Virus record (IMG/VR): IMGVR_UViG_3300020165_000007
Span: 124,001 to 188,000 of that record
Strand: one strand, 5' to 3'
DNA length: 64,000 bases
The translations under genes and the position numbers were made by a program. Shown one piece after another: positions 3,900 to 53,113 of this stretch (position 1 is its first letter; each line of letters starts with the position of its first letter). The notes under the pieces are model-generated. The model had not been told where the DNA came from. It saw only the letters and a program-made list of their open reading frames with translations, and did no database searches.

Positions 3900-4343
3900 T
3901 TAAGAGTTAAGTTTTTTAAGTTTATCCCTATATTTTATCGAAGATTCAAAATCCTGAGATTTTATAGACTCATCTAATTTAGTTTTAATTTCCTCAATCT
4001 TTTCTTTATTCGACTCAATTTTTTTGATTTGGTCTCGTATTTTAGCGGCTGTCTCATAATCTTGTATTTCTACCGCATCTGATAATTGGGTTTTTAAAGT
4101 AAAAGTTTCATCTGTTTCTACAGTTGTTGGTTCATCCGTATATTGATATAACGTTGTGACTTGATATGTACCATCATCAGAAATAAATGTTTCTTTTTTC
4201 CATTTACCGTTTTTATCATCTCCGTGTTCTACATTTTTTTTACCTTTAATATATAAAGGGTTTGATTTATATGACCCAATCCCGTCAAAAAGAGAGTCAA
4301 AATCTGAAAATAAGTCATTAAAATTAAAATTTCTACGTAACAT
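3900..4343 (-). CDS. Protein with two C-terminal UVR (UvrB/C) coiled-coil motifs, candidate ClpC adaptor
   Basis: LSDAVEIQDYETAAKIRDQIK and LDESIKSQDFESSIKYRDKLK; N-terminus resembles sHSP-type FNDLFSDFDSLF; divergent from clpC. Confidence 0.7.
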   Translation of the reverse strand: MLRRNFNFNDLFSDFDSLFDGIGSYKSNPLYIKGKKNVEHGDDKNGKWKKETFISDDGTYQVTTLYQYTDEPTTVETDETFTLKTQLSDAVEIQDYETAAKIRDQIKKIESNKEKIEEIKTKLDESIKSQDFESSIKYRDKLKKLNS

Positions 4344-4522: not shown

Positions 4523-6544
4523 ATGATAGAATCGGTAGACCCAAACGAAAAAGGAGGAGGAAAAAAGAAAAAAGAAGTTAGTAACTCCAGAACTCCTGTT
4601 CTAGATAATTTTTCTAGAGATTTAATTAAGTTAGCGTCGGAAGGTAAATTAGACCCTGTTGTAGGTCGAGAAGTAGAAATAACAAGGATTGCACAAATTC
4701 TTTCTAGAAGAAAGAAAAACAATCCTATTATTGTTGGTGAACCTGGATGTGGTAAAACTGCGATAGTGGAGGGTTTAGCTATGAGAATTTTTGAGGGAGA
4801 TTGTCCTCAAAATCTGTGTGATAAAAGAATCGTATCTTTAGATATGACTTCTATAGTCGCGGGAACAAAATATAGGGGTCAGTTTGAAGAAAGAATGAAA
4901 GTTATTTTAGATGAACTCCATGATAACCATGATATTGTAGTGTTTATTGATGAGATTCATACTATTATAGGTGCGGGTAATTCCTCAGGTTCATTAGACG
5001 CTTCCAATATATTTAAACCGGCACTAGCGAGGGGTGAAATTCAATGTATCGGAGCAACAACTCTTGATGAATACCGTGAAAATATAGAGAAAGACGGGGC
5101 TTTGGAGAGACGTTTTCAAAAGGTGATGGTTGATGGGTCTACACCTGAAGAAACTATGGTTATCTTAGAGAACTTAAAGTCTAGATATGAAGACCATCAT
5201 AAAGTATCGTATAGTTATGAATCATTAGAGGCTTGTGTTTCTTTATCAGGAAGATATGTTAATGATAGAGAATTCCCTGATAAAGCGATTGATGTTATGG
5301 ATGAGGTTGGGGCTAAGGCACAAATCAATGTTAAATTTCCTGAAATTATAGAGAAACTTAGAGAGGATGCTTTTAATATAAAAGAAAAGAAAATACAAGT
5401 CGTAAAAAGTCAGAGATATGAGGAAGCGGCTCAATTAAGAGATGAAGAGAAAAAGATTCTTTCTCGTCTTGAGTTTGAAAAAGAAAAATTCGAAAGTGAT
5501 AAGGATGAGAAAAGAAAAGAGATTACCGAAGAAATGGTTTATGAGGTAGTTTCTACTATGACTAAAATTCCATTGTCTAAATTAAATGCGGATGACAAAG
5601 AATCTTTATTAAAGTTAGAAAGCAATCTTAACAATTCTGTTATTGGACAAGAAGAGGCAGTCAAAACAATATCTAAGTCTATTAGAAGAAATAGGGTCGG
5701 TATTAAAGACCCTAATAGACCCATCGGTTCGTTTATCTTTTTAGGTTCTACAGGAATTGGTAAGACTCACTTAGCTAAACAATTAGCTAAAGAAATTTTC
5801 GGGGATGAGGAATCTTTGATTAGGGTAGATATGTCAGAATATCAAGAGAAGTACTCAATGAGTAGACTTATAGGTTCTCCTCCAGGGTATGTGGGATATG
5901 ACCAAGGAGGTCAATTAACTGAAGCAGTTAAAAATAAACCATATTCTGTGGTACTATTTGATGAGATTGAAAAGGCGAATAAAGATATTTTTTCAATTCT
6001 ACTTCAAATGATGGATGATGGTCATTTAACAGATTCGTTTGGTCGTAAGATTAATTTTAAAAATTGTCTTATTATAATGACCTCAAACTTAGGGGTTAAG
6101 AAATTACAAGATTTCGGTACCGGTGTTGGGTTTGACACTAAGACTCGTATGTCAAGTAACGAAGAAATGAAAAAGTCCTTACTACAAAAGGAACTTAAAA
6201 ATCACTTTACCCCTGAGTTTTTGAATCGTGTAGATGAAGTTGTAGTTTTTAATCCCCTTAAGGAAAACGAGGTGGAAAAAATTGTTGAAATTGAACTATC
6301 AAAACTTAATCGTAGATTAGTTAAGTTGGGTTATAAGGTATCCATTGACAATAAGGTTAAAAAGTTTTTGTCTGAGGTTGGGTTTGATGAGAAGTATGGA
6401 GCAAGACCTATAAAACGGGCAATTCAAGAAAAAATCGAGGATTTAATTTCAGAAGAAGTATTAAGAGGTAATATCGTAGAAGGTAAACCCTGTAAACTTA
6501 AAATGAAAGGTAAAGAAGAGGTTGTACTAATAAAGGGGAGATAA
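4523..6544 (+). CDS. clpC: ClpC-type AAA+ unfoldase lacking the N-terminal Clp-repeat domain
   Basis: Walker A GEPGCGKT and GSTGIGKT; Walker B VFIDE and LFDEIEK; UVR M-domain QRYEEAAQLRD; GYVGY pore loop; VGF ClpP-docking loop. Confidence 0.92.
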   Translation: MIESVDPNEKGGGKKKKEVSNSRTPVLDNFSRDLIKLASEGKLDPVVGREVEITRIAQILSRRKKNNPIIVGEPGCGKTAIVEGLAMRIFEGDCPQNLCDKRIVSLDMTSIVAGTKYRGQFEERMKVILDELHDNHDIVVFIDEIHTIIGAGNSSGSLDASNIFKPALARGEIQCIGATTLDEYRENIEKDGALERRFQKVMVDGSTPEETMVILENLKSRYEDHHKVSYSYESLEACVSLSGRYVNDREFPDKAIDVMDEVGAKAQINVKFPEIIEKLREDAFNIKEKKIQVVKSQRYEEAAQLRDEEKKILSRLEFEKEKFESDKDEKRKEITEEMVYEVVSTMTKIPLSKLNADDKESLLKLESNLNNSVIGQEEAVKTISKSIRRNRVGIKDPNRPIGSFIFLGSTGIGKTHLAKQLAKEIFGDEESLIRVDMSEYQEKYSMSRLIGSPPGYVGYDQGGQLTEAVKNKPYSVVLFDEIEKANKDIFSILLQMMDDGHLTDSFGRKINFKNCLIIMTSNLGVKKLQDFGTGVGFDTKTRMSSNEEMKKSLLQKELKNHFTPEFLNRVDEVVVFNPLKENEVEKIVEIELSKLNRRLVKLGYKVSIDNKVKKFLSEVGFDEKYGARPIKRAIQEKIEDLISEEVLRGNIVEGKPCKLKMKGKEEVVLIKGR

Positions 6545-6558: not shown

Positions 6559-6590
6559 TTTGGTTTAAAGTAAATAATTTAGTATATTTG
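6559..6590 (+). promoter_or_regulatory. Bacteroidota housekeeping-sigma promoter (-33 TTTG, -7 TAnnTTTG)
   Basis: TTTG 6559-62, 20-nt spacer, TATATTTG 6583-90. Confidence 0.8.
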
Positions 6591-6608
6591 TATACAAATC
6601 AACCACAA

Positions 6609-7679
6609 ATGAATAACGAACAACTTAATCGTCTCAAAGAAGTACTTTCAATCCCAACTAAAACCTATAAGGAAGATGGAATGGTAGACTATATTATTAA
6701 TGTTCTTGAGACGATTGACGGTGTAACGTATTACAATGACCCAATGAATAACGTTTACGCCACTAAAGGTACATTACCTGATGGTGAGTTTTATCCGATG
6801 TTTGTTGCACATACTGATACGGTTCATGAACTGGTTGAAGACATTGTTGTTGAGGAGGAGAATCTCGAAAAACCACCCACTTTTGGTCGAACGTTTACTG
6901 AAGAACTAAACTTATCTCTAAAGGGATACACTCCACAAGGGAATCCAACGGGAATCGGTGGTGACGATAAATGTGGTGTTTTCTTGGCACTCGAACTCCT
7001 TCGCACTTTGTCACATGTAAAGGTCGGTCTTTTCGTATCTGAAGAGACCGGATGTCACGGCTCTAAGGAGTGTGATGTTGAGTTCCTCAAGGATGTGGGT
7101 TATGCGATTCAATTTGACGCACCTGGAAATCATTTGGTTACCGAAGTTTGTTCGGGAATTCGTTTATTTGAGAGTAATGGTGAGTTCATTAAACGCATTA
7201 CCCCCATCTTTGAAAACTCTATGGGTGTATCTCCTTACCTTCAGTCACACCCATATACTGATGTCTCACAAATTAAACAAAAAGGTGATTTTTCTTGTAT
7301 CAACTTTTCTTGTGGTTATTACAACATGCATTCAACATCTGAATTTGTAGTTGTAAAAGATGTTGAAGATGCCCTAAAACTCGCTATTGGTGTTGTAAAT
7401 GAGCTTGGTTTGAATAAGTTTGGTTACACTTACATCAAACCTACATACGATTACTACGGTCAAGGTAGTTTATTCACTAGTTATGATATTGAGGATGATG
7501 ATTACGATTATGAATCAGTAGAATGGGAAGAAAGTGATAATCATTACTTCAACATCTCAGATGATTCAATTGAAATTGAAAGTAAAATTAATGGAAATAC
7601 TGTCACTTTAAATATGAAGGATATGGCAGATTTATATCTACTTATCCGTGAGCGTTTATTGGAAAACGAAGAGATTTAA
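6609..7679 (+). CDS. M20/M28-family zinc peptidase
   Basis: AHTDTVH, GGDDKCG, EETGCHGS and GYYNMH metal-ligand motifs; start at ATG 6609. Confidence 0.85.
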   Translation: MNNEQLNRLKEVLSIPTKTYKEDGMVDYIINVLETIDGVTYYNDPMNNVYATKGTLPDGEFYPMFVAHTDTVHELVEDIVVEEENLEKPPTFGRTFTEELNLSLKGYTPQGNPTGIGGDDKCGVFLALELLRTLSHVKVGLFVSEETGCHGSKECDVEFLKDVGYAIQFDAPGNHLVTEVCSGIRLFESNGEFIKRITPIFENSMGVSPYLQSHPYTDVSQIKQKGDFSCINFSCGYYNMHSTSEFVVVKDVEDALKLAIGVVNELGLNKFGYTYIKPTYDYYGQGSLFTSYDIEDDDYDYESVEWEESDNHYFNISDDSIEIESKINGNTVTLNMKDMADLYLLIRERLLENEEI

Positions 7680-11584: not shown

Positions 11585-11615
11585 TTTGATTGTTTAAGAT
11601 TTATATTTATATTTG
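11585..11615 (+). promoter_or_regulatory. Bacteroidota-type promoter for tmRNA
   Basis: TTTG 11585-88, 19-nt spacer, TATATTTG 11608-15. Confidence 0.75.
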
Positions 11616-11634: not shown

Positions 11635-12021
11635 GGGGGTGTTTTATGGATTTGACCGGTATGGTCAGGTGTAGAGTGCACGTAGTGAGAGGATACCTAT
11701 CACTTTAATCTACGGTTTCAATTTGTAACAGGCGAAACTTTCGCAAAACTTCAGGCTGTCGGTTTACTCCGCACTGAAGAGGTTTACGCTGCCTAAGGCA
11801 TCGTTTACCACGGGTCGGTCAGGACGTTAACCTTGGAACAGAAGTCCGTTGTAGTGGTGGAAAAATGACTGAACCCTAAATCGAGTCATACATCTATTGT
11901 CAGTGGAGGATGTTAAAATTCAACTGAATATTTCGGATTATTAAGAATTAATAATGAACTAAACGTGTAGGACTCTATATTTGAAATATTTGGGACCTGG
12001 GTTCGAGCCCCAGCACCTCCA
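11635..12021 (+). ncRNA. ssrA: tmRNA with tag (A)GETFAKLQAVGLLRTEEVYAA*
   Basis: 5' GGGGGTG...GGATTTGAC; 3' GACCTGGGTTCGAGCCCCAGCACCTCCA; G3-U70 acceptor pair; tag ORF 11731-11796 ends in AA-stop. Confidence 0.93.
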
Positions 12022-12027
12022 CAAATA

Positions 12028-12060
12028 AATCCCCTATTGTTTTGGCAGTAGGGGATTTTT
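12028..12060 (+). terminator. Terminator after tmRNA, overlapping the next promoter
   Basis: aatcccctattg...cagtaggggattttt; TTTG 12041 and TATATTTG 12065-72 overlap it. Confidence 0.7.
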
Positions 12061-12102
12061 GACTTATATTTGTATCACAATCACCACATAAACAATATTA
12101 AT

Positions 12103-13094: not shown

Positions 13095-13592
13095 ATGAGT
13101 AACGTACTTGTACTAAATTCTGATTTTTCACCATTAAATATCACAACTTTACATAGAGGGTTTATATTGGTGAACAAAGGTAAAGCAGAAATAGTAAAAA
13201 AGGGAGACCGTGATATCGTCACCACTATAGGTAAATTTGTTCGTCCCGTAATTATAAGGTTATTAAATTATATTAGATATCGAAGAACCTCATTAAAAGT
13301 TAATAGAAAAAGAATTTTTAAAAGAGATAAGTCTACCTGCCAATATTGCGGTTCAAAAAAAAATCTAACTATCGACCACATTATACCTCGTTCTCGTGGA
13401 GGTAAGAATACTTGGAAAAATTTGGTTACTTGTTGTTCTAGATGTAATGTTACAAAAGGTAATAAAACCCCTAACGAGTGGGGTGTTAAGTTAATAAATA
13501 GACCTCATGAACCCTCTGTATTTTCTTCCTTATTATACGAAGAAGCTGAGGTTATATGGGACGATTTTAGGAAAGGATTTTCTACTTATTGA
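13095..13592 (+). CDS. HNH endonuclease (McrA-like)
   Basis: RDKSTCQYCG...LTIDHIIPRSRGG...NLVTCCSRCNVTKG. Confidence 0.9.
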   Translation: MSNVLVLNSDFSPLNITTLHRGFILVNKGKAEIVKKGDRDIVTTIGKFVRPVIIRLLNYIRYRRTSLKVNRKRIFKRDKSTCQYCGSKKNLTIDHIIPRSRGGKNTWKNLVTCCSRCNVTKGNKTPNEWGVKLINRPHEPSVFSSLLYEEAEVIWDDFRKGFSTY

Positions 13593-13648: not shown

Positions 13649-16645
13649 ATGAATTTTACTTTTTTTAATAAGGCACGCCGTATGCTTTTAATACCTTTAA
13701 TGCTCTTGTTTTCAGTAGTATTAAGGGCTCAATGTGACGTTTTTATAGAACAGGGTTCTGTAGTCGTCACTGATAATGGTAGTGGTGTCAAGTTTCAATT
13801 TGACGTTACAAACAATTCGGGTAGTGAATGGGAAGGGGACGTACTTAAGATGTATTGGTCACTTAATTCAAGTGCACCAATATGGACCATAGATTATACC
13901 TCAAACAACAATGTTGGACCCTTACCTCCTGGTCAGACTAGGACAATAACAACCCCTTGGTTCGACATTCCAAATCTCCCTTCATGGTTTCCTGAAGACC
14001 CAGGTCCTGGTGGAGTAAATGATTTATCGTGGGAAGAGTCTATGGAATGGGCGTATTATGGTTTATCTTTCCCTTTTGATGGGGCTTGGTCACAATTTAA
14101 TCTTAGGTTAGGTAGTTGTGGGTTAGCTGATGGCGCTTGGGTATATAACTCAGACGGAACACCATACTACGGACCTTTTAATACTGATTGTCCTGATGTA
14201 AATAATGATGCGTTTTGTGATTGTGATGTTAATTTCCTTGGATTTGACCCTGAAACATATGACGTAAGTATTGAAGTAGTATCACATTGGAACTGTGGCA
14301 CTTCTTTAAATACGGTGGGTCAGTCGGGACAAATGGATTATGTAAATATGGTTCAAATAGGTGCACACGTACCTGGTTGGGATTATGAATGGGGTTGTAC
14401 CGCATCTGAATATCATTTAGGATGGACATTTGATAATCCTGTATCATTTGCTGAGTATTACGCGGGTGATACAATAAATTATAATATGTTTGCTGACGAT
14501 ACATTTTATGATGATTGTTTCCAAAGTATCTTAGAGTCTGATACATTAACTTCATGTTTGGAAGTTGTATTATGGCAAATAAACTATTCGGAAACTGCGA
14601 TTATTGGTGAAATTGATGGTGGTTGGGCCCAGACGTGTGGATTATGTGCGGACCAAACACAGTTTTATCCTGACATATCAATGGAATTAAATTCTATTAA
14701 TGTATGTGATGCACCACCCCCTATTTACCCTGGTTGTACTGACCCTTTAGCAGAAAACTTTAATGGTAATGCGGGGTATGATGACGGGACTTGTACTTTT
14801 GCACCTGTATACGGTTGTCAAGACCCTATCGCTTGTAATTATAATCAACAAGCAACCGAAAATGATGACTCATGTATATATTGTGATACTCCAGAGGGAG
14901 AAGAATTATGTAATGAATATCATGGCGATAGCACTTATTGGGAGTTTTATAGTAATCTATTCGACTGTGATGATGAAGTAATATATACTCCTGACGCAGG
15001 TGGATATGTTTCATTTGTAAATGCAGTGTGTGATGACGGGATAGTTTCTAACGAAATTAGTATAATAGTAGTTAACCCTGATACGGGTAATTTTAATTCA
15101 AATGACACATTATTTGTGTATTGTGTAGAAGTACCTGAATTAGGTCTTGATACTTGTTTAAATGGTAATTTAAACGGTACTGATTGGATTGAACCTGGTG
15201 GGGGTCAGTTAATATGGACTATTAATGTACCTGATTTTATAACTCAACTAACAATTAATGTATATGATGTTGAAGGTGAGATTGATGAATATTCATATAA
15301 CAATACGTTCTTATACTTAAATAATATAAGTGACCCCGATGTATGTCTTGTTTTAGGATGTACAGACCCAATAGCGGAAAATTATAATCCGTTAGCAACT
15401 GAGGATGATGGAAGTTGTGAATATATGGTTGATTTATCATTAGATAGTATAACTATAAACGAATACTGTGACGGATTTACCCCATACTGGGTTCCTACGT
15501 TACATCTAAACAATCTAACCAATCCCGCGATAAATGAATACTGTATTAAAGTTCAAGTCTTAGGACAAACAAACGACACTATTTGTTTTAATGCGATGGG
15601 TACAACAATAAACTCATTCGGTGATATCTCTATTGAGTGGCCTAACCCCATATACTCATATGGTGTTGTTAGTGTACACGTTTTAGACGTAAATGGTGAG
15701 AGTCCTAACTCATGGGAAAATTTCGGAGAAGATGATAATATTAGTAATAATATACTTGTCCTTACAATCGGAGGTTCCGGAATTAATTGCAATGTTGCGG
15801 GATGTATCGACGATACTGCTAATAACTATAATCCTGACGCAAATGTGGATGATGGTAGTTGTACTTACGATATATTCGGATGTACCGATGAAAGCGCTAA
15901 TAATTACAATCCCAATGCGAATTTAGACGATGGTACATGTACGTATGATATTTATGGTTGTACAGATGAAGAAGCAAATAACTACAACTCAACAGCTAAC
16001 GTGGACGATGGGTCTTGTACTTATGACGTTTTCGGCTGTACAGACTCAACCGCAAATAATTATAACCTCTTAGCTACAGTCGATGACGGTTCTTGTGAAT
16101 ATGATGTATTTGGGTGTACTGATGAAAGTGCTAACAATTATAATTCACTTGCTAACGTGGATGATGGTAGTTGTACTTACGATATATTAGGGTGTACCGA
16201 TTTAAACGCTAACAATTATAATATGTTCGCAAATGTAAATGATGGGTCATGTGAATATGACGTGTTTGGATGTACTAACATGGACGCATTAAATTATAAT
16301 TTTGAAGCGACGATAGAAGATGGTACTTGTGTTTTTCCTAGTCCTTGTGATGAATTCGACGGTCAGGCATTTGCACCTAACGCATTTAGTCCTAATAATG
16401 ACGGTTTAAACGATTCTTGGGGGGTAATAACCGACGAAGAGTGTTGGAACACATGGGAAGTATCTATTTTCAATAGATGGGGTCAAGTGGTCTTTAAAAT
16501 CGATAATCCTAATGGAAGATGGGATGGAAGTTTTAATAATGGTGGGTATTACGTACAAGACGGAGTTTACGCTTACACAATTAGGGCAGTGGCATGGAAT
16601 TTGGAGGTCTTGGATACGAGTGGTTATATAACCGTTCTCAGGTAA
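13649..16645 (+). CDS. Large secreted Cys/Asp-rich repeat protein with T9SS type B C-terminal domain (gliding-motility-associated CTD)
   Basis: Signal peptide ending VLRA-Q; ten GCTD..A.NY...A..DDGSC repeats; C-terminal APNAFSPNNDGLND...IFNRWGQVVF...WDG...DGVYAY...GYITVLR. Confidence 0.88.
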   Translation: MNFTFFNKARRMLLIPLMLLFSVVLRAQCDVFIEQGSVVVTDNGSGVKFQFDVTNNSGSEWEGDVLKMYWSLNSSAPIWTIDYTSNNNVGPLPPGQTRTITTPWFDIPNLPSWFPEDPGPGGVNDLSWEESMEWAYYGLSFPFDGAWSQFNLRLGSCGLADGAWVYNSDGTPYYGPFNTDCPDVNNDAFCDCDVNFLGFDPETYDVSIEVVSHWNCGTSLNTVGQSGQMDYVNMVQIGAHVPGWDYEWGCTASEYHLGWTFDNPVSFAEYYAGDTINYNMFADDTFYDDCFQSILESDTLTSCLEVVLWQINYSETAIIGEIDGGWAQTCGLCADQTQFYPDISMELNSINVCDAPPPIYPGCTDPLAENFNGNAGYDDGTCTFAPVYGCQDPIACNYNQQATENDDSCIYCDTPEGEELCNEYHGDSTYWEFYSNLFDCDDEVIYTPDAGGYVSFVNAVCDDGIVSNEISIIVVNPDTGNFNSNDTLFVYCVEVPELGLDTCLNGNLNGTDWIEPGGGQLIWTINVPDFITQLTINVYDVEGEIDEYSYNNTFLYLNNISDPDVCLVLGCTDPIAENYNPLATEDDGSCEYMVDLSLDSITINEYCDGFTPYWVPTLHLNNLTNPAINEYCIKVQVLGQTNDTICFNAMGTTINSFGDISIEWPNPIYSYGVVSVHVLDVNGESPNSWENFGEDDNISNNILVLTIGGSGINCNVAGCIDDTANNYNPDANVDDGSCTYDIFGCTDESANNYNPNANLDDGTCTYDIYGCTDEEANNYNSTANVDDGSCTYDVFGCTDSTANNYNLLATVDDGSCEYDVFGCTDESANNYNSLANVDDGSCTYDILGCTDLNANNYNMFANVNDGSCEYDVFGCTNMDALNYNFEATIEDGTCVFPSPCDEFDGQAFAPNAFSPNNDGLNDSWGVITDEECWNTWEVSIFNRWGQVVFKIDNPNGRWDGSFNNGGYYVQDGVYAYTIRAVAWNLEVLDTSGYITVLR
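15800..16336 (+). repeat. Seven tandem 78-bp (26 aa) coding repeats
   Basis: GC[TI]D..ANNYN..AN.DDGSC.YD[VI]F units. Confidence 0.9.
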
Positions 16646-23457: not shown

Positions 23458-24432
23458 TTAGAAAGAACATGACGGAACTGTAATTTTTTTTTCACTTGTT
23501 TTATTGTTTATTTTTATTACAACAGATATTTCATGAGCACCACCTGTGGTGGGACCTAATTGTGATATAGTAACATCATAATTGTAAAAGAACATTAATT
23601 CTCCCGTATCTACACCCATATTTAATAATAAAGCATCCCTATAAGAGTATCCTTCTACAAGTCTTAACCCACCACCAAATAAGAATTTACCTTTTCTAAT
23701 ATTATTATTTAATGTTAGTTGTGTGAACTGACCTTGTCGTAGTATTGAAATTGATGGTGTATAAGTCACGTCTTCATTCCTATCGGTAGATTTATCTAAG
23801 GGTATTATCACCCCTCCGTGAATATTATATTTTACTGGTAAGTAACTTTCTCCATATATTAACGTTTGGTTCGGTTGGTTTATATGTGACACACTAAATC
23901 CTGCAAACCATTTATGATTAAATAAAAGTATTCCTGTACCTACATCAAAATAATTAACTTTAAAGTTATTTAAAAAAGATTCATTTGTGTAATTAGTAAA
24001 CGCGACACCGTTAAAAGAATCTTCAAAGAACAGTTTTTTACTATCTATGAAATTTTGCTTATAACTAAATTCCAAACCAAATTTAATATTTAAATTATTA
24101 GTTAGTTTTTGTTGATTACTATAATAGGTGTTAAATGAATTTAATGAGTATATTCCATTGGCGGACCTATCATTCATCATTAATATACCGAAACCACTTT
24201 TCAAATCTCTAATATATTGTTCGTAAGTTACAACGCTAGTTACGTATTGACTACCTAATGATGGCCAATGATTTCTATATGTCATACTTAACTCAGGACA
24301 ATTCCTTGACCCAGCGAATGCGGGATTCAAGTACAAAACACTACTGTTTATTTGTGAAAATGAAACGTCTTGAGAAAAACCTATTGCAAACAAACTTAAA
24401 AACCCAAAAATTAATAAAATCTTCTTAATCAT
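23458..24432 (-). CDS. PorP/SprF-family type IX secretion outer-membrane protein
   Basis: Signal peptide then QDVSFSQ, LYLNPAFAG, YRNHWP, HINQPN, YNYDVT, GAHEISV and terminal CSF; beta-barrel-like pattern. Confidence 0.85.
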   Translation of the reverse strand: MIKKILLIFGFLSLFAIGFSQDVSFSQINSSVLYLNPAFAGSRNCPELSMTYRNHWPSLGSQYVTSVVTYEQYIRDLKSGFGILMMNDRSANGIYSLNSFNTYYSNQQKLTNNLNIKFGLEFSYKQNFIDSKKLFFEDSFNGVAFTNYTNESFLNNFKVNYFDVGTGILLFNHKWFAGFSVSHINQPNQTLIYGESYLPVKYNIHGGVIIPLDKSTDRNEDVTYTPSISILRQGQFTQLTLNNNIRKGKFLFGGGLRLVEGYSYRDALLLNMGVDTGELMFFYNYDVTISQLGPTTGGAHEISVVIKINNKTSEKKITVPSCSF

Positions 24433-24498
24433 ACCTATAAATATCAAAAAATATGTCTATTTATTTGTAGATTAACTAAATATACTTATATTTGTAAT

Positions 24499-28277: not shown

Positions 28278-28688
28278 ATGACTGTACATGAACTTAGTGA
28301 CTACTTCAACCAATCTCCGAACATGGCAAAAGTTTATAAAGAACATAAGTCCATCGGTCGTTTGATTCGTAGTAATATGTTTAAGTACTCTAATCCTCGT
28401 CGTTGGAATAATAAGGACTTGACTTATAAAATCACGTACATTAAGGTCGACAAGAGTGAAAATTTAATAGTCAATCTCAAAGTCTCAGGTACGATGGGTA
28501 ATAATTGGGGTGGAGAAAAGGGGACTTGTGTTACTGAATATGTTAAAGTTAATTTCTCAAGTTCCCGTAGACGTAATGATGATATTCGTAGGGCGGTTCG
28601 AGAAGATGTTCAAAAGTTTTTCCGTCTTTTCGGTATGGATAGTTATAGGGTTGAGATTGGTAAGATTAAAGTGTGTAAAGAACTTTAA
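28278..28688 (+). CDS. Basic hypothetical protein
   Basis: Promoter TTTG 28226 / TATATTTG 28250. Confidence 0.75.
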   Translation: MTVHELSDYFNQSPNMAKVYKEHKSIGRLIRSNMFKYSNPRRWNNKDLTYKITYIKVDKSENLIVNLKVSGTMGNNWGGEKGTCVTEYVKVNFSSSRRRNDDIRRAVREDVQKFFRLFGMDSYRVEIGKIKVCKEL

Positions 28689-31270
28689 AGTTTTACCGTA
28701 AAATACTTAAAAGCTAACGGACCTAATTTCCTCAATTCTCGGTTAATATTATTAGTAGTTAACTCTTGCTCTTTATCTTGTAGATTTCTAAATGCTACTG
28801 ATATCATAACCTGTTGTGACTTCTCTGCAAGTTGCAACAGGTTTTCTTTTTCATCCTCATCTTCAATTTGTTGGTAACTACCCTGTAATTCTTGTATCTT
28901 TAAATATTTTTCCAAGAAGTCTCTACCGCTCCAAGTAAAATCAGGTGATTGCATCATATTAACAATACCACTATCTCTTAACGCCTTTAAAAAATCAAAG
29001 ATATAACCACCATTATCCATTTTTAGAAGGGGTAGTAATGGTTTCATTTCATCAATAAAATTTTCATTAATTGTTGTAATAGACTCAGGATATGTATCAC
29101 TAATAGTACCCTCATTTTTATCGGGGTAATCTGAATTCTTTAATATATGTCTAAGTAAGTTTAAAGAACCAATTCTTTTGTCGTTAGTATCCACAACAGT
29201 CCAAGGAACCTCACCTTTACCCAAGTCAAAAACTTTTTCTTTGTATTCTGTATAGTCATCCCACTTTTCTAAAGACTTTTCATCATTAGGTGAAAATTTC
29301 CAATATTTTAAAGGCGAAGACTTTCTTAAATCAAATCTTTTTTCTTGTGTTTTAGGTGTTATTGATAACCAAAACTTATATAAGTCAGTTCCCCTACTAA
29401 CTAAAGACTTTTCAAAATCATTAACATTATTCATAAACCCCTCATATTCTTCATCAGTTCCATATCCCATAACTGGTTCCACAATTCCTCTGTTATACCA
29501 ACTACGGTCAAAAAAAGTAATTTTACCAGGTTCAATATGTTGTTCATATCTTTTAAACCAATCCTCCCTTTCTTCAGGTGTTGGTATTCCCAAGGCAACC
29601 ACATTAAAATATTTTGGGTCTAAATATTTAGTTATGGTTCTTATCGTTGAGCCTTTACCTGCAGTGTCTCTACCTTCGAATACTACTGCGATAGATTTAC
29701 CTGTCTGCTTGATGTGTTCTTGTAATTTTAATAACTCAACTTGTAATGGTAGTAACTCTTTTTTAAATTGTTTTTTACCTATGGAAGATATCTCAGGCTC
29801 CTCGCCTCCGTAAACTAACTCATCTTCAACATTAAAATCATCATCTTCAAATTCTGACGATTTTCTATTACCGATAGAATTAACTAAGATTTCTAAATAT
29901 TCTCTGGCGTTTATTCTTGGGTTACCTGATTTTAAAAATTTTCTTTCTAAGTTTCTTATTACTAAGTTGTTTATATCCTCATCTTTTAGTTGAGATAGTA
30001 AATCTTCCATTTCTGACGGGTCAATATCTTTACTTCTTAATACGTTAGATAAATCTTCTTTAGATTCATCCATTTGACTGGGAAGGTCTATCAATCCTTT
30101 ATCTTTCATTATTCTCGCCAGTCTATCTCCATATAAATCAATAACTCTTTTTAAGAATAAATCAGGATTTTTTCTAATATATTGAATTATATCAAACCTG
30201 ACATTTTTAGAGTATTTTCCAAATAAGTCTGATATTTTGTCGTCTTTTCTATACGAGTCTTTACGATAAAACAGGTTTTTTATTTCTTTATTACTGACCT
30301 TAGGAAACGTAATAATTTTACAATCACCTCCAACCTTACCCTGTGGTAATGAAATACTATTTACACTTTTCCCACTTTTATAATTATTAATAACTAAATC
30401 AATTAAACTATCGGTGTCATTTAAACAATATGAAATATATTCATCATTTAAAATAGAAAAAATCCATTTTAGTGACTTTTCTTCACCGGACACCGCACTC
30501 TTCCCCTCTGTTTCTCCTACAACGAAAGATACTTTCATCATTAGTTTTTTATATGGATTAAACTCATCATCTTTATCCATTAAATCTATAGGTCTTTTTA
30601 AATCATCTATTTCATACCCATCCTCAACCATTTTAATTTTTGCGGCCTTAAACCCACTAGATAATGAACCTAAGTCAAATCGTTCACCTGGTTGTGTCAA
30701 TTTAACTGAGTAATAATCCTCACCGATTTTTATATCTTCTTTTCGTTGAGATATTATAGGTTTACCTCCTGTAAGTCCTGCTAATAACCCTTCAAAATTA
30801 AATCCTCTACCGTCTTTATCTTTTTTAAATGATAAGAAGTACTCATAAAATCTAATTTTATCAACTAATCTTTTTAATGTGTTTTCTAAATCAATATCTT
30901 TATTAATGTCAAAAAATGTTAGTCCTTCACTACTTAAAATCTTTTTTATCACATTACTTGAAGACATCTTTGTTTTTGGTATCGGACCTAACGTAGACAT
31001 TATTTTACTTAGAGTTGTTGATGTCGCGTCTATTTCTTCTTTAATTACATCTTGATTTTCTTTAACCCACACATCTTCATCACCAACTAAATTAAGGGTT
31101 CTACCGTTATCCCACTCAACATAATATAATGGTTCATTGCTCCATGGGTCAGACCCAATACCAATAACAGTACCTTTAGTGCCGACAGTTATTGGGGAGT
31201 AAGGGTCACTCATAACAATTAAAGTGACTCTATCACCTTTTTTTAAATTTGGGTTAATATCCATACTCAT
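28685..31270 (-). CDS. ppk2: Multidomain protein: DUF4314-like, putative PD-(D/E)xK nuclease, polyphosphate kinase 2, C-terminal domain
   Basis: QVELLKLQ, FEGRDTAGKG, FDRSWYNR and WKFSPND PPK2 motifs; N-terminal GDRV...DPY...GTKGTV...VEWDNG. Confidence 0.85.
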   Translation of the reverse strand: MSMDINPNLKKGDRVTLIVMSDPYSPITVGTKGTVIGIGSDPWSNEPLYYVEWDNGRTLNLVGDEDVWVKENQDVIKEEIDATSTTLSKIMSTLGPIPKTKMSSSNVIKKILSSEGLTFFDINKDIDLENTLKRLVDKIRFYEYFLSFKKDKDGRGFNFEGLLAGLTGGKPIISQRKEDIKIGEDYYSVKLTQPGERFDLGSLSSGFKAAKIKMVEDGYEIDDLKRPIDLMDKDDEFNPYKKLMMKVSFVVGETEGKSAVSGEEKSLKWIFSILNDEYISYCLNDTDSLIDLVINNYKSGKSVNSISLPQGKVGGDCKIITFPKVSNKEIKNLFYRKDSYRKDDKISDLFGKYSKNVRFDIIQYIRKNPDLFLKRVIDLYGDRLARIMKDKGLIDLPSQMDESKEDLSNVLRSKDIDPSEMEDLLSQLKDEDINNLVIRNLERKFLKSGNPRINAREYLEILVNSIGNRKSSEFEDDDFNVEDELVYGGEEPEISSIGKKQFKKELLPLQVELLKLQEHIKQTGKSIAVVFEGRDTAGKGSTIRTITKYLDPKYFNVVALGIPTPEEREDWFKRYEQHIEPGKITFFDRSWYNRGIVEPVMGYGTDEEYEGFMNNVNDFEKSLVSRGTDLYKFWLSITPKTQEKRFDLRKSSPLKYWKFSPNDEKSLEKWDDYTEYKEKVFDLGKGEVPWTVVDTNDKRIGSLNLLRHILKNSDYPDKNEGTISDTYPESITTINENFIDEMKPLLPLLKMDNGGYIFDFLKALRDSGIVNMMQSPDFTWSGRDFLEKYLKIQELQGSYQQIEDEDEKENLLQLAEKSQQVMISVAFRNLQDKEQELTTNNINRELRKLGPLAFKYFTVKL

Positions 31271-34001: not shown

Positions 34002-34847
34002 TTACAAACTTTGTAACATTTCAATAAGTTTTGGATGTGGGTAAATATCAAACTTATCTTTTCTAAAATTAGTGTGTGACCATATCCCCGAACCACCCTC
34101 ATTCGCTAATGGTTGGTAGTCAAAAGGTTTCCAATTGTTTCTTTTAGCATCTGTATATAACCTTAACGCATAATTAGTATTTCTACCATGTAATCCGTCT
34201 TCGAGTAGCATTTTACCATTCATACCTAAGTACCCCTTACTATTTAAAAATTTCTGTTGTTTAAGTATAGGTAAATCCTTTATTGTATCATCATAAGATT
34301 CAAATAATTCATTAATGCCCTTACACACGTCAATATTATATTTTTCAGATAAAGTAGATATCAAATACTTAATAGACGAGATTTGTTTATCTGTATAGTT
34401 GTGATAATATCTAAATCCTCTCCAATTTTTACCTAAATCAATTACATCTTCATCAGGTACTTTAGAATTGACATATGTGAAATATTGACCGTCTTGAGAC
34501 CTCGTTAGAGGTCCGTAATTACATATTTCAATACCTATTGATTGTTTATTTAACTGTGAGTTGTTTGAATTTTTAGTCCCTAAGTGATGTGCCCAATATT
34601 TTAAATCAAAACACTCCACAATATTACCGTCCCACTTAGTGTCTCCATCTCTAGTTGATTTATTTCCTATTACAAAATGAGTCGCAACCCTTAAAGATTT
34701 ACCTCCTTTAGTTTTATCTCTATCCCACGCATACACAACCCAATCAGGTCTATGACTACCAGCAGTATGATGTAGTACTATAGATTTCTTTTCCGTTTCA
34801 TCCGGAAAAAATTCATCTTTTGGAAGGTGTAATTTATTTATCTTCAT
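34002..34847 (-). CDS. N-acetylmuramoyl-L-alanine amidase (endolysin-like) with PG-binding-like insert
   Basis: IVLHHTAG, WAHH, SIGIEI, WSH...KFDIYP; insert QKFLN..GY...EDGLHGRNT. Confidence 0.85.
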   Translation of the reverse strand: MKINKLHLPKDEFFPDETEKKSIVLHHTAGSHRPDWVVYAWDRDKTKGGKSLRVATHFVIGNKSTRDGDTKWDGNIVECFDLKYWAHHLGTKNSNNSQLNKQSIGIEICNYGPLTRSQDGQYFTYVNSKVPDEDVIDLGKNWRGFRYYHNYTDKQISSIKYLISTLSEKYNIDVCKGINELFESYDDTIKDLPILKQQKFLNSKGYLGMNGKMLLEDGLHGRNTNYALRLYTDAKRNNWKPFDYQPLANEGGSGIWSHTNFRKDKFDIYPHPKLIEMLQSL

Positions 34848-34883: not shown

Positions 34884-35471
34884 ATGAAAAAAATAACTTT
34901 ATTATTTAACTTATTACTTTCATTTACCACATTATGGTCTCAAAATGAAAAAAATATTGTTACGGATATTTTTATTGTAAAATATTCTGAAACTTTAGAG
35001 CAACCTACATTTATTTTTTATGAGGTAAAGTGCCCTAACGGTAATCAATCAAGAAGTGGTCTAAACTTTAAAAAATATGAAGGAGTACATACCTCGGATA
35101 ATGACGATTACGTAGATAATATATGGGATAAAGGTCACTTAGCACCCGCAGCCGCATTTAACTGTGATTTAGAAACCTTAAAAAAAACATTTTCTTTTTT
35201 AAATTGTGCGTTACAGCATCAGTCGTTAAATAGGGGTCCTTGGAGAGAGTTAGAAGAGTTTGAGCGTAACTTATCTAAAATTTTCGATAAAGTTTTTGTT
35301 GAAATAACTTGTCATTTTAGTGAAAATTCGTTAGTATTACCAACTGGAGCAACAGTTCCTGACGGATTTAGTAAAAATATAACATTTAATAATACCATTG
35401 AATGTTTTTATTTTCCTAATTCAGATGTGTCAGGAATTGATTGGTCAGAATTTAGAATAACTAATAAATAA
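34884..35471 (+). CDS. Secreted DNA/RNA non-specific endonuclease (NucA/EndA type)
   Basis: Signal peptide; [27 protein letters not shown]. Confidence 0.85.
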
Positions 35472-35493
35472 AATAATAAAAATTAAATTAAGT

Positions 35494-37374
35494 ATGGGAA
35501 AAGTTATTGGAATCGATTTGGGTACAACTAATTCATGTGTTTCTGTAGTTGAAGCGGGTACTCCTATCGTAATAGTCAATTCTGAAGGTAGAAGAACAAC
35601 ACCTTCAATAGTTTCATTTAAAGATGGTGACCGCATTGTTGGAGATGCAGCAAAACGTCAATCTATTACAAATCCAGAGAATACAATATACTCTGTTAAA
35701 CGTTTTATCGGTAGTACCTATTCAGAGGTTTCGAAAGAAGTTAAAAAAATGCCATATAAAATATCTAAAGGTGACGGTGGAAAAGTCATAATAAATGTTA
35801 ATGATAGAGATTATGTACCACAAGAAATTTCGGCAATTGTTTTACAAAATTTGAAAAAAACTGCTGAAGATTATTTAGGAGAAAAAGTAACACAAGCCGT
35901 TATTACGGTACCTGCATATTTTAACGATTCACAAAGAAACGCAACAAAAGAAGCGGGTGAAATTGCTGGTCTTGAGGTACTTAGAATAATTAACGAACCT
36001 ACTGCAGCTGCACTATCTTACGGTTTAGATAAAGAAGGAGATAAAAAAGTTGCAGTATATGACTTAGGTGGTGGTACTTTTGACATATCTATTTTAGATA
36101 TGGGTGATGGGGTATTTGAAGTTTTATCCACTAACGGAGACACTCATTTAGGTGGAGATAACTTTGACGAGGTTTTAATTGATTGGATGATAAATAAATT
36201 TAAAGAGGAGTCGGGTATTGACGTATCTAAGGATTCTATGGCGATACAGAGACTTCGTGACGCATCTGAGAAATCTAAAATCGAATTATCATCGTCAAGT
36301 TCAACAGAGATTAATTTACCTTATCTCTCTGCAGGTTCAGAAGGTCCAAAACATTTTGTATGTAAATTAACTAGGTCTGAATTTGAAAGGATGGTAGAGG
36401 ATTTAGTAAAGAAGACCATTTCTCCTTGTCGTAAGGCGGTAAAATCGGCAAATCTAAAAGTAGATGATATTGATGAAGTAATTTTAGTAGGAGGTTCAAC
36501 AAGAATGCCATGTATACAAAATGCCGTTGAAAAGTTCTTTAAGAAGACCCCATCTAAAGGAGTTAACCCTGATGAGGTAGTCGCTATGGGTGCGTCTATA
36601 CAGGGTGGGGTACTTGCTGGTGATGTTAATGACGTTCTTTTATTGGATGTAACTCCTTTATCTTTAGGTATTGAAACAATGGGTGGTATTATGACAAGGT
36701 TAATCGAATCTAACACGACAATACCCACATCAAAATCTCAGGTATTTTCAACGGCGGTAGATAATCAACCCGCTGTTGATATTCATGTATTACAAGGTGA
36801 AAGACCTTTATCTTCAGACAATAGAACGTTAGGTAGATTCCAATTAACAGATTTACCCCCATCACCAAGAGGGATACCTCAAATAGAAGTGACGTTTGAT
36901 ATTGACGCCAACGGTATTATAAATGTAAGTGCAAAAGACAAGGCTACTGATAAGGTGCAAAATATACGTATAGAATCAGGAAATGGTTTGTCAGATGAAG
37001 AAATTGAAAGAATGAAGAAAGACTCTTTAAAGAATGAGGAGTCTGATAATAAAAAGAAATCTGAGATTGAAAAATTAAATGAGGTAGACTCTATGATTTT
37101 TCAAACCGAAAAACAGATAAAAGAATTCGGGGATAAATTAAGTGACACAGACAAAGACAATTTAAATAATAGTTTAAGTAAATTAAAATCCTCATATGAG
37201 GAAAAAGATTTTAATTCTATTGACGAGGATTTAAATTTGTTAAATGAAACATGGTCATCAATATCAACAAAATTATACGAAAATAATCAAGAAGATGATT
37301 CTAATCAATCAGATTCTTTAGATGACGATATAGATGTAAATGATGTGGAATTTGAAGAAGTAAAAACACATTAA
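35494..37374 (+). CDS. dnaK: Hsp70 chaperone DnaK
   Basis: [32 protein letters not shown] and DVEFEEV motifs. Confidence 0.97.
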
Positions 37375-37392
37375 AATTAAATAAATAAAATT

Positions 37393-37821
37393 ATGAAAGT
37401 TAAAAACGGAGACAGTGTCAAGGTCCATTATATCGGCACTTTAAATGATGGAAATGAGTTTGATAATTCATATAAAAGAGGTTCTACACTTGATTTCAAA
37501 GTAGGTGGAGGGCAAATGATTAAAGGATTTGATGACGCCATGGTTGAGATGGAAGTAGGTGATAAAAAAAGTATTAACATTAATCCTGAAGAGGCGTATG
37601 GTCCTCGTAGAGAGGAGGCGATAACTTCAGTCTCTAAAGATAATTTTCCACCTGATTTTGTAGCTAAAGAAGGTGAGATGGTACAGGGAAGTACAGAGAG
37701 CGGACAACCAATCACAGCGTTAATTTTAGAGATAAAAGATGATGAAATTATCTTAGATATGAATCATCCTTTAGCGGGAGAAGAGTTAAATTTTCAAATC
37801 GAACTTTTAGAAATAGTATAA
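37393..37821 (+). CDS. FKBP-type peptidyl-prolyl isomerase (SlyD-like, no His-rich tail)
   Basis: VKVHYIG, FDNS, PEEAYG, DMNHPLAGEELNF. Confidence 0.9.
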   Translation: MKVKNGDSVKVHYIGTLNDGNEFDNSYKRGSTLDFKVGGGQMIKGFDDAMVEMEVGDKKSININPEEAYGPRREEAITSVSKDNFPPDFVAKEGEMVQGSTESGQPITALILEIKDDEIILDMNHPLAGEELNFQIELLEIV

Positions 37822-39841: not shown

Positions 39842-39924
39842 GGAGGGATGCCAGAGTGGTTAATGGAGCAGTTTGCTAAACTGTCGTCGGTAACGACGCG
39901 TGGGTTCGAATCCCACTCCCTCCG
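39842..39924 (+). tRNA. tRNA-Ser(GCT)
   Basis: GGAGGGA/TCCCTCC acceptor, loop TTGCTAA, long variable arm, TTCGAAT T-loop. Confidence 0.93.
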
Positions 39925-40097
39925 CAAAAATTAAAAAATGAACTTTAAATATAACATATCAAACAATACAGAACATTTTGAATACACGGTGTATTTGACT
40001 GAAGAAGAATTCAAATCAATTAATTTCGAAAATTACTCAACTACATTTGGTTAAATGAATAATAAGTCATATATTTGTAGAACAAAACAAATAAACA

Positions 40098-40352
40098 ATG
40101 TCAAAAGAAAAACTGTATCGTAGTTCAAATGGTGACTACCTTTACTTGTTCAACTGGAAATGTGGTGGGTTCAATGACGTGTGGGCACCCAATAAGCGTG
40201 AAGCTTATAAGCGTGTAATGAAGGAGCGTAAGGAGTCGGAGGAAAAATACCCTAATCATTCTAAACTTCGTCCTGACTATGATTCAATGCGTCGTTGCAC
40301 TTATAGTGAATATCAGGAACAAAATAAAATGGGTTGGCTACTATCAATCTAA
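40098..40352 (+). CDS. Small hypothetical protein
   Basis: Promoter TTTG 40046 / TATATTTG 40070. Confidence 0.75.
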   Translation: MSKEKLYRSSNGDYLYLFNWKCGGFNDVWAPNKREAYKRVMKERKESEEKYPNHSKLRPDYDSMRRCTYSEYQEQNKMGWLLSI

Positions 40353-40358
40353 TTATAT

Positions 40359-40432
40359 GACTTCGTAGCTCAGTTGGTTAGAGCATCTCACTTTTAATGA
40401 GAGGGTCCTGGGTTCGAGTCCCAGCGGGGTTA
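40359..40432 (+). tRNA. tRNA-Lys(TTT)
   Basis: Cloverleaf; TCTCA-CTTTTAA-TGAGA. Confidence 0.92.
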
Positions 40433-40712: not shown

Positions 40713-40718
40713 TGAAAT

Positions 40719-42121: not shown

Positions 42122-42125
42122 AATT

Positions 42126-52441: not shown

Positions 52442-53113
52442 ATGGAATACGGAGAAGATTTTAAAAAGTATGCAATGAGTGACCATAATATCTCATCATT
52501 TAATATGGATTATTATGAAAAACAAATTAAAGGTTCACTCACACCATATATTCTTGAAGAAAGGGAAATGAGAGTTACTCAGATGGATATATTCTCTAGA
52601 TTAATGAGGGACCGTGTATTGTGGGTGGCCGGTGGTGTTGATGACCGTATGTCAACAGTGGTCCAAGCTCAACTAATGTATCTTGACTCTGTAGATAATT
52701 TAGATATTACAATGCATATCGATTCTCCAGGTGGTTCAGTTAAATCTGGTTTGTCTATGGTAGATGTGATGCAGTATATTAAATCGGACATTGTTACTGT
52801 AAATACGGGAATGGCAGCTTCTATGGGTTCAGTACTATTAGGTGCGGGGACTAAAGGAAAAAGGTCGTCACTAAGATTTTCAAAGACAATGTTACACCAA
52901 TCTAGCGGAGGGGCTTATGGAAATATTCAAGACGCTAGAATTAATTTTGAAGAGTGGGAAAAAGTTAATAAAATTCTTTTTGAATTACTCGGAGAGTTCT
53001 GTGGTAAAGACCCAAAACAGGTTATTGAAGACTCCTCAAGGGACTTTTGGATGGACGCTAATGAAGCACTTGAGTATGGTATTATCGATGAGGTGATAAA
53101 AGTTAAGTCGTAA
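52442..53113 (+). CDS. clpP: ATP-dependent Clp protease proteolytic subunit
   Basis: DIFSRLMRDR, IDSPGGSV, GMAASMG (catalytic Ser), MLHQ (His), RDFWM (Asp); start at MEYGEDF. Confidence 0.95.
   Translation: MEYGEDFKKYAMSDHNISSFNMDYYEKQIKGSLTPYILEEREMRVTQMDIFSRLMRDRVLWVAGGVDDRMSTVVQAQLMYLDSVDNLDITMHIDSPGGSVKSGLSMVDVMQYIKSDIVTVNTGMAASMGSVLLGAGTKGKRSSLRFSKTMLHQSSGGAYGNIQDARINFEEWEKVNKILFELLGEFCGKDPKQVIEDSSRDFWMDANEALEYGIIDEVIKVKS

What the first reader, a model, noticed from the sequence alone, without database searches (positions are those of the whole stretch)
11635..12021. Phage tmRNA with an extended tag, alongside phage ClpC and ClpP
Seen: the tag reads GETFAKLQAVGLLRTEEVYAA (21 codons). 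Established: Bacteroidota tags are typically short, GE...YALAA-like. Inference: the GE start and AA end are kept, while the inserted middle could be a recognition site for the phage ClpC/ClpP (4523, 52442) or an adaptor. That would form a self-contained ribosome-rescue and degradation circuit, useful if host defences cleave mRNA, tRNA or host tmRNA. The resume codon was assigned by eye.
Basis: partly seen in the sequence, partly recalled or inferred. Interest (0 to 1): 0.62.

Follow-up and report, generated by a model that had tools for sequence, protein, structure and literature searches.

The report
Jumbo-phage tmRNA with conserved long tag
A marine jumbo phage of Bacteroidota carries its own working-looking ribosome-rescue RNA (tmRNA), whose tag is twice the host length, is conserved in well over a hundred related phages, and always lies just downstream of a phage ClpC unfoldase gene. 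This points to a phage-private protein-disposal signal that has not been tested.

Summary
Rfam finds a full-length tmRNA at 11635-12024 (97 bits). The 21-codon tag frame is supported by ARAGORN calls in relatives, an invariant A at -4, zero stops and many synonymous swaps.

The window lies in a 270-kb IMG/VR jumbo phage with Bacteroidota-type promoters and T9SS-type genes. All 57 relatives reached through ClpC, and 119 reached through a tag pattern, carry a 21-22 residue tag. It has an invariant Gly-Leu core and a terminal Ala.

Ninety sampled Bacteroidota tmRNAs have tags of 6-15 residues, mostly 9-10. Among 185,579 species genomes the tag pattern hit only two stray short contigs.

ClpC lacks the N-domain but keeps its pore loops and ClpP-docking loop. 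It lies 2-6.4 kb upstream on the same strand wherever the contig allows a test (57/57 and 47/47).

The "self-contained circuit" is not supported. This phage has no SmpB, and ClpP is missing from two of five near-complete relatives. No tool could test whether ClpC recognises the tag.

Long phage tags have a precedent in mycobacteriophage Bxz1 (25 residues). Verdict: a real, functional-looking element and a new variant of a known kind. The ClpC link rests on synteny only.

The parts
11585..11615 (+). Bacteroidota-type promoter: TTTG (-33), a 19-nt spacer, then TATATTTG (-7), ending 20 nt before the mature 5' end
   Evidence: The motif TTTG-N17-21-TAnnTTTG occurs 12 times in the window against 3.2 +/- 1.7 in shuffles (0 of 100 shuffles reach 12). 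Nearly all matches lie just upstream of genes or tRNAs. The consensus itself comes from my knowledge of Bacteroides promoters.
11635..12024 (+). tmRNA gene. The mature RNA probably spans 11635-12021 plus an added CCA. The acceptor stem pairs 11635-11641 with 12014-12020.
   Evidence: Rfam 97.1 bits over the full model. In 29 aligned phage copies, 30 of 39 predicted pairs show compensatory changes, and G3:U70 is kept in 29/29.
11727..11727 (+). Invariant A four bases before the resume codon
   Evidence: Invariant in 29/29 aligned copies (A93). It sits where A86 of E. coli tmRNA sets the frame (that role is from my knowledge).
11731..11796 (+). Tag reading frame: resume codon GGC, 21 codons, then TAA
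   Evidence: 0 stops in this frame against 95 and 49 in the other two frames; pN/pS 0.62 against 0.88 and 1.17.
12028..12061 (+). Intrinsic terminator hairpin followed by a U run
   Evidence: Folds at -20.1 kcal/mol, z -5.85, and no shuffle folds as well. The consensus scanner missed it.
4523..6544 (+). ClpC-type double AAA+ unfoldase without the N-domain (673 aa)
   Evidence: Pfam AAA, AAA_lid_9, UVR, AAA_2 and ClpB_D2-small, with no Clp_N. Residues 14-665 align in one stretch with residues 150-800 of S. aureus ClpC, E 2.7e-223. Carries a G-V-G-F loop.
52442..53113 (+). ClpP peptidase
   Evidence: Pfam CLP_protease, E 3e-57. The Ser, His and Asp motifs are present in the translation.
3900..4343 (-). 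147-aa protein with two UVR motifs, transcribed divergently from ClpC. It is a possible ClpC partner, but that is speculative.
   Evidence: Pfam UVR, E 4.8e-14. The same arrangement occurs in a relative.
6588..7679 (+). Weak M42/peptidase-T-like protein directly after ClpC
   Evidence: Pfam M42 E 1.5e-6, partial match. PDB peptidase T E 2.3e-5. Not present at this position in all relatives.

Best explanation
This is a functional phage tmRNA. It is transcribed by the host RNA polymerase from its own Bacteroidota-type promoter and ends at its own terminator. It is then trimmed, given CCA and charged with alanine by host enzymes, with G3:U70 as the identity pair. In this phage it must be delivered by host SmpB, because the phage has none. 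It rescues ribosomes stalled on broken messages during infection. It adds Ala plus 21 residues of a clade-specific tag. The tag has two conserved parts: a basic-flanked hydrophobic core (K-[LM]-x-x-h-G-L-h-R) and a non-polar end (mostly V-A; Y-A-A here). I read this as a two-part degron. The most likely reader is the phage's N-domain-less ClpC, encoded 5 kb upstream, working with phage ClpP here and with host ClpP in relatives that lack their own. What is shown: the RNA, its structural and peptide-level conservation, its restriction to phages, and the strict ClpC linkage. What is inferred: the use of host SmpB, the timing and purpose of rescue, and above all which protease or adaptor reads the tag.
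For: tmRNA identity and frame. Peptide selection: Gly11, Leu12 and the final Ala are kept in all 57 copies found through ClpC, while their codons vary (Leu TTA/CTT/CTC/CTA, Arg CGN/AGA, Gly GGT/GGA). Phage-specific: the host phylum's tags are 6-15 residues. The tag pattern found only two stray contigs, of 1625 and 668 bp, among 185,579 species genomes. It found at least 120 viral contigs, and all 119 loci fetched were true tmRNAs. Linkage: every ClpC locus with at least 6.4 kb of downstream sequence has the tmRNA on the same strand, 1.95-6.35 kb away (57/57). Of 50 records found through the tag alone, 47 have ClpC upstream; in two of the other three the tmRNA sits at the contig end on that side, and in the third, a 17-kb fragment, Rfam did not place it. 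ClpC competence: Walker A and B motifs and both pore loops in 80/80, and the ClpP-docking G-[VI]-G-F loop in 79/80, including the phages without ClpP. Trans-translation is the likely purpose: three relatives encode their own SmpB, in one case 0.5 kb from the tmRNA. Expression hint: a 381-nt metatranscriptome contig matches 11619-11999 exactly while the flanks are empty.
Against: No result shows that ClpC or ClpP touches the tag. Co-occurrence within a single clade may reflect inherited gene order only. ClpP is missing from 2 of 5 near-complete relatives. ClpC of 48-58% identity occurs in other huge phages that have no tmRNA, or have one far away with a short ARAGORN tag. The genes between ClpC and the tmRNA differ among relatives, so the two are not one operon. 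pN/pS of 0.62 indicates only moderate constraint. The RNA evidence comes from assembled contigs, which cannot prove transcription or RNA ends. The record is 88% complete, so absence of SmpB is not certain.
Confidence: 0.5

Rival explanations
1. The phage tmRNA mainly raises ribosome-rescue capacity, and its tag sends products to host proteases (ClpXP, Lon, or periplasmic or other C-terminal-specific enzymes). The nearness to ClpC is inherited gene order and nothing more.
For: The ClpP gene is dispensable in the clade. This genome has no SmpB, SspB or ClpS-like helper, so host factors are used anyway. Similar ClpC genes exist in huge phages without a tmRNA. The non-polar C-terminus ending in Ala is the general style of bacterial tags.
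Against: A plain C-terminal degron does not need an invariant Gly-Leu core 10 residues from the end, nor double the length. The end is V-A in most copies, whereas nearly all sampled hosts end in [LM]-A-A. The linkage to ClpC has no exception in 104 testable contigs despite variable genes in between.
Confidence: 0.3
2. The tag is not a degron. Its amphipathic, basic-flanked core might recruit a chaperone or an unknown phage factor, drive aggregation or membrane association of the released chains, or act while still in the ribosome.
For: The core resembles an Hsp70-binding pattern (a hydrophobic stretch between K and R; from my knowledge). This phage encodes Hsp70 and an FKBP isomerase.
Against: Hsp70 is present in only 3 of 20 relatives and 1 of 5 near-complete ones, while the tag core is universal. 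The invariant terminal Ala and non-polar end fit protease recognition.
Confidence: 0.1
3. The RNA acts chiefly as a competitor. By titrating host SmpB it replaces or blocks host tagging, so that host quality control or stalled-ribosome sensing is blinded. The tag sequence would be secondary.
For: A tRNA-like-domain-only tmRNA in mycobacteriophage DS6A has been discussed as an SmpB titrator (PMC4131195). This phage has no SmpB of its own.
Against: The full mRNA-like part, the frame-setting A, the open frame and the stop codon are kept in all copies, with peptide-level conservation. A mere decoy would not need these. Some relatives add their own SmpB.
Confidence: 0.1

Closest known systems
Chromosomal tmRNA (ssrA) of Bacteroidota
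   Same: One-piece tmRNA of about 390-400 nt with G3:U70, a T-arm and a long helix 2. The tag starts with G-E/G-N and ends in Ala, like the host tags GENNYALAA, GNTQYAMAA and GETNYAMAA.
   Different: The tag is 21-22 residues against 9-10, with a conserved internal K...G-L...R core and mostly a V-A end. Nucleotide similarity to sampled host tmRNAs is confined to the 3' tRNA-like part. It is encoded by a virus.
tmRNA of cluster C mycobacteriophages (Bxz1 and kin) and Bacillus phage G
   Same: A full-length tmRNA carried by a large lytic phage among tRNA genes (PMC4131195). The Bxz1 tag is also long, at 25 residues.
   Different: No sequence relation between the tags. The Bacteroidota-phage clade couples the gene to a ClpC. 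No function or protease partner has been reported for the mycobacteriophage tag, as far as I found.
Translation genes of huge phages (Al-Shayeb et al. 2020, PMC7162821)
   Same: That paper reports tmRNAs and SmpB in phages over 200 kb and proposes rescue of stalled ribosomes. Its 634-642 kb genomes hold the nearest GenBank ClpC.
   Different: Those two genomes have no tmRNA. The paper does not discuss tag sequences or a ClpC link in the passages found.
Two-part ssrA tags read by an adaptor plus a protease (E. coli SspB with ClpX), and the long Mycoplasma tags read by Lon
   Same: The working analogy is one tag part for a helper or second contact and a C-terminal part for the unfoldase pore; and long tags where the usual ClpXP route is not the one used (both from my knowledge).
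   Different: No SspB homologue here. The resemblance is functional only and was not tested.
Bacterial ClpC (B. subtilis, S. aureus, M. tuberculosis ClpC1)
   Same: A single-stretch alignment over D1, the short M-domain and D2, with the docking loop for ClpP.
   Different: The roughly 145-residue N-domain, which binds adaptors and phospho-arginine, is replaced by a short Lys-rich tail. All 120 best database relatives have the same 672-674 aa form or are fragments of it.

Membership tests
tmRNA (Rfam RF00023, one-piece) | Covariance-model match over the whole model, above the curated cut-off | tested here: met
   97.1 bits against 47, model positions 1-374
tmRNA (Rfam RF00023, one-piece) | tRNA-Ala-like acceptor stem with G3:U70, and a T-arm | tested here: met
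   G:U in 29/29 aligned copies. T-stem pairs show compensatory changes.
tmRNA (Rfam RF00023, one-piece) | Internal open frame starting at a resume codon set by an upstream A and ending in a stop | tested here: met
   Seven of the 12 ARAGORN calls in relatives give the full tag in this frame and four more start later within it. The window copy itself is not called.
tmRNA (Rfam RF00023, one-piece) | Pseudoknots PK1-PK4 | tested here: inconclusive
   Rfam posterior probabilities are low across PK2-PK4. RNAalifold cannot predict pseudoknots; only one short helix was recovered there.
tmRNA (Rfam RF00023, one-piece) | Works with SmpB | not testable with these tools
   No SmpB in this genome. SmpB is present in 3 of 20 relatives. 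Binding was not assayed.
tmRNA (Rfam RF00023, one-piece) | Expressed as a stable small RNA | tested here: inconclusive
   Metatranscriptome contigs coincide with the gene, but contigs cannot prove transcription or RNA ends.
Canonical ssrA degron for ClpXP | C-terminal L-A-A or M-A-A, as in the host phylum | tested here: not met
   The window ends Y-A-A. Most relatives end V-A, whereas the hosts end [LM]-A-A.
ClpC (class I Clp/Hsp100 unfoldase) | Two AAA+ modules with Walker motifs and pore loops, and a short M-domain | tested here: met
ClpC (class I Clp/Hsp100 unfoldase) | N-terminal Clp_N repeat domain | tested here: not met
   No PF02861 match. The alignment starts at residue 145-150 of solved ClpC structures.
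ClpC (class I Clp/Hsp100 unfoldase) | ClpP-docking loop with the [ILV]-G-F tripeptide | tested here: met
   G-V-G-F in the window protein; present in 79/80 relatives. The docking prediction gave no verdict.
ClpP serine peptidase | CLP_protease fold with the Ser-His-Asp triad | tested here: met
   Pfam E 3e-57. The triad motifs were read from the translation.

The most novel reading that the evidence does not exclude
The long tag is a phage-private degron. By out-competing host tmRNA for stalled ribosomes, the phage relabels unfinished host and phage chains with a signal read only by its adaptor-free, N-domain-less ClpC, perhaps helped by the neighbouring UVR-motif protein. This would route them to ClpP for amino-acid recycling, outside host control. 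It would be the first orthogonal tag-protease pair evolved by a virus.
Probability: 0.3. Interest if true: 0.78.

Novelty: new variant of a known kind. Interest (0 to 1): 0.6.

Why it matters
Phage tmRNAs have been listed for years, but no role has been shown for their tags. Here a tag of fixed length and conserved core is shared by an abundant, widespread clade of marine and estuarine jumbo phages and is absent from the bacterial genomes searched. It is locked to one unfoldase gene. That turns an open question into a simple experiment: what does a virus gain from its own trans-translation RNA? If the pair is orthogonal to host ClpXP, it would also be a ready-made degradation tag system for Bacteroidota genetics. 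It would also show a new way for phages to take over host proteostasis when messages are being cut, whether by phage nucleases or by host defence RNases.

Tried and rejected
- **ARAGORN on the window:** no call at default or lowered thresholds. In relatives it called only 12 of 57 copies, so the miss reflects low sensitivity and is not evidence against the gene.
- **Nucleotide search of GenBank phages with the tmRNA:** only 48-nt matches to Flavobacterium phages at the tRNA-like end, and no relative.
- **The genome search 'relatives' and a taxon name as centre:** I reached a Bacteroidota centre through the CHU_C protein instead.
- **Complex prediction (two ClpP copies with ClpC D2):** verdict 'no answer', score 0.03. 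This counts neither for nor against binding. The tag is too short for that tool, so tag-ClpC docking could not be tried.
- **Hsp70 as the universal tag reader:** rejected, because it is present in only 1 of 5 near-complete relatives.
- **Tag core inside proteins of this genome:** only chance-level matches.
- **SspB, RF-1/ArfB and CCA-adding enzyme in this genome:** none. One 14-bit SspB hit contains stops and is noise.
- **attP-type tmRNA fragment left by an integrating phage:** rejected, because the gene is full-length, has its own promoter and terminator, and differs from host genes.
- **Limits:** the tag pattern covers only 21-codon variants.

Full report
**What is there.** The window is bases 124001-188000 of a 270,383-bp IMG/VR virus record that CheckV rates 88% complete. 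Rfam's tmRNA model matches 11635-12024 on the + strand over its whole length, at 97.1 bits against a cut-off of 47. The acceptor stem carries the G3:U70 pair. The 3' end reads discriminator A then CAA, where most relatives encode CCA. ARAGORN fails on this copy at every threshold tried. It recognises only 12 of 57 related copies, so the failure is one of sensitivity.

**The reading frame.** Four lines of evidence support this frame:
- Rfam aligns its consensus resume codon to this GGC.
- Seven of ARAGORN's 12 calls in relatives give the full 21-22-residue tag in this frame. Four more start at a later codon of the same frame, and one (L026) gives an unrelated peptide.
- An A four bases upstream is invariant in 29 of 29 aligned copies. 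In E. coli tmRNA the A at this position sets the frame (my knowledge).
- Among 40 distinct 21-codon versions the tag frame has no stop, against 95 and 49 stops in the other two frames. Its pN/pS is 0.62, against 0.88 and 1.17.

**A conserved, phage-specific tag.** A search of IMG/VR with the ClpC protein returned more than 598 matches, of which 80 loci were kept. The tmRNA is present in 57 of them. All 56 relatives aligned, and the window copy, have a tag of 21 or 22 codons with the pattern G-[NED]-[VTI]-[LIF]-x-K-[LM]-x-x-h-G-L-h-[RKA]-...-A.

Gly11, Leu12 and the last Ala never change. Their codons do: four Gly, six Leu and four Ala codons are used, and Arg switches between CGN and AGA. This is selection on the peptide, not on the RNA.

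A degenerate 66-nt pattern of the tag hit 40 of the 80 loci once each, with no false hit in 2.8 Mb. In one genome for each of 185,579 prokaryote species it hit five places:
- Three are not tmRNAs.
- The other two are contigs of 1625 bp and 668 bp, binned into a Terrimicrobiaceae MAG and a Nanopelagicales MAG.
- The Nanopelagicales MAG has its own ordinary tmRNA on a large contig, so I take both short contigs for stray phage fragments.

**Comparison with the host phylum.** The host is a member of Bacteroidota. The window holds 12 copies of the Bacteroides-type promoter motif against 3.2 expected, placed in front of genes and tRNAs. It also has a PorP/SprF gene and a protein with a CHU_C type IX secretion signal, whose nearest cellular relatives are in Chitinophagales, Flavobacteriales and Cytophagales.

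I sampled 151 genomes of the phylum around a Marinoscillum genome; 144 have a tmRNA above the cut-off. I fetched 91 of these, and ARAGORN gave tags for 90. Eighty-seven are 9 or 10 residues and the longest is 15. Nearly all end in [LM]-A-A. The phage tag shares the G-E or G-N start and the final Ala with them but is twice as long. The phage RNA resembles the host RNAs only in the 3' tRNA-like part, so it is not a recent copy.

**Signs of function.**
- *Structure:* across 29 copies, 30 of 39 predicted base pairs show compensatory changes.
- *Transcription signals:* the gene has its own promoter at 11585-11615 and a strong terminator hairpin at 12028-12061.
- *Distribution:* the phage occurs in marine and estuarine metagenomes from at least 15 studies.
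- *RNA libraries:* in one metatranscriptome a 381-nt contig matches 11619-11999 without a difference. It begins four bases after the -7 box, and nothing from that run lies on the 2 kb before it. In another, a variant tmRNA contig is the deepest contig on the stretch. These are assembled contigs, so this is a hint of expression and not proof.

**The Clp link.** The ClpC at 4523-6544 aligns in one stretch with residues 150-800 of solved ClpC structures (E 2.7e-223). It lacks the N-domain, which a short Lys-rich tail replaces. The best 120 database relatives share this 672-674 aa form or are fragments of it. All 80 relatives keep both Walker pairs and both pore loops, and 79 keep the G-[VI]-G-F loop that docks on ClpP.

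Every ClpC locus with at least 6.4 kb of downstream sequence has the tmRNA, on the same strand and 1.95-6.35 kb away (57 of 57). The 23 loci without it all end sooner. In the reverse direction, 47 of 50 new records found through the tag alone have ClpC upstream. In two of the three exceptions the tmRNA lies at the contig end on that side. The third is a 17-kb fragment in which Rfam did not place the tmRNA. The genes between the two differ among relatives.

- This genome has no SmpB, RF-1/ArfB domain, SspB or CCA-adding enzyme.
- Among 20 relatives searched whole, SmpB occurs in three, in one case 0.5 kb from the tmRNA.
- ClpP occurs in ten of the 20 and in only three of the five near-complete genomes. 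A 321-kb genome with terminal repeats and a 291-kb genome lack it, yet keep ClpC with its docking loop and keep the tag.
- Hsp70, present in this window next to an FKBP isomerase and a non-specific nuclease, is rarer still.
- Huge phages with a 48-58% identical ClpC have no tmRNA, or have one elsewhere with a short tag.
- The docking prediction for ClpC D2 with ClpP gave no verdict.

**Reading.** The constant pair is tmRNA plus ClpC. ClpP and SmpB are optional extras that the host can supply. An unfoldase without the adaptor-binding N-domain must pick substrates through its pore or M-domain. N-domain-less ClpA still degrades ssrA-tagged proteins (my knowledge), so direct reading of a C-terminal tag is plausible.

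A conserved core ten residues from the end suggests a second contact, either on ClpC or on a helper. The divergent 147-aa UVR-motif gene is a candidate helper, with no evidence beyond its position. I rate the tmRNA and the tag frame as near certain and the degron reading as likely. I put ClpC as the reader of the tag at about one in three.

**Novelty.** Phage tmRNAs are known from mycobacteriophages and Bacillus phage G (PMC4131195) and from huge phages together with SmpB (PMC7162821). A long phage tag also has a precedent: Bxz1 encodes 25 residues. Three things are new here: the breadth and peptide-level conservation of one tag family, its absence from cellular genomes, and its fixed partnership with an N-domain-less ClpC. 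I found no paper on this.

Noticed in passing
window 34884-37821: A proteostasis and nuclease cluster: a non-specific DNA/RNA endonuclease (Endonuclease_NS), a full Hsp70/DnaK (626 aa, E 1e-253) and an FKBP prolyl isomerase, all on the + strand. Hsp70 is sporadic among relatives (3 of 20). The nuclease could be a source of broken messages.
   Followed up: partly
window 13649-16645 and 23458-24447: The phage encodes a 998-aa protein with a CHU_C type IX secretion sorting signal and a PorP/SprF-like membrane protein. These are host-like T9SS parts and point to a Bacteroidota host.
   Followed up: partly
window 28685-31270 (-): An 861-aa protein combining DUF4314 with a polyphosphate kinase 2 domain (E 6e-70).
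   Followed up: no
window 39842-42370, 51295-51369, 52336-52421; also 40891-40960: A block of tRNA genes. ARAGORN. Rfam adds a further tRNA match at 40891-40960 (47 bits) that ARAGORN misses. tRNA-Ser at 52336-52421 ends 20 bases before the ClpP start codon.
   Followed up: no
window 12022-12024: The tmRNA gene encodes CAA where most relatives encode CCA, and the phage has no CCA-adding enzyme gene. The 3' end must therefore be trimmed and rebuilt by the host.
   Followed up: partly
L086 (1625-bp contig) and L089 (668-bp contig) in genome contigs: Fragments of this phage family's tmRNA sit in published MAGs of Terrimicrobiaceae and Nanopelagicales. This is probably mis-binning, and in the first MAG it would be mistaken for the organism's own tmRNA.
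   Followed up: yes
L040 about 15348-15764 (-); records G162, G164, G166: Some relatives carry their own SmpB gene. In G162 it lies about 0.5 kb downstream of the tmRNA on the opposite strand.
   Followed up: partly
window 13095-13592: A free-standing HNH endonuclease gene lies between the DUF6011 gene and the CHU_C gene. It is possibly a mobile homing element.
   Followed up: no
window 53200-53823: The GAF-domain protein just after ClpP contains a stretch (I-T-K-L-Q-D-I-G-L-R) that resembles the tag core. About that many matches are expected by chance in six frames, so I give it no weight.
   Followed up: yes
window 44219-46234 (-), 55131-56087, 34002-34847 (-): Further peptidase and cell-wall enzymes: an M43 metallopeptidase domain, an M23 peptidase, and an N-acetylmuramoyl-L-alanine amidase.
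   Followed up: no
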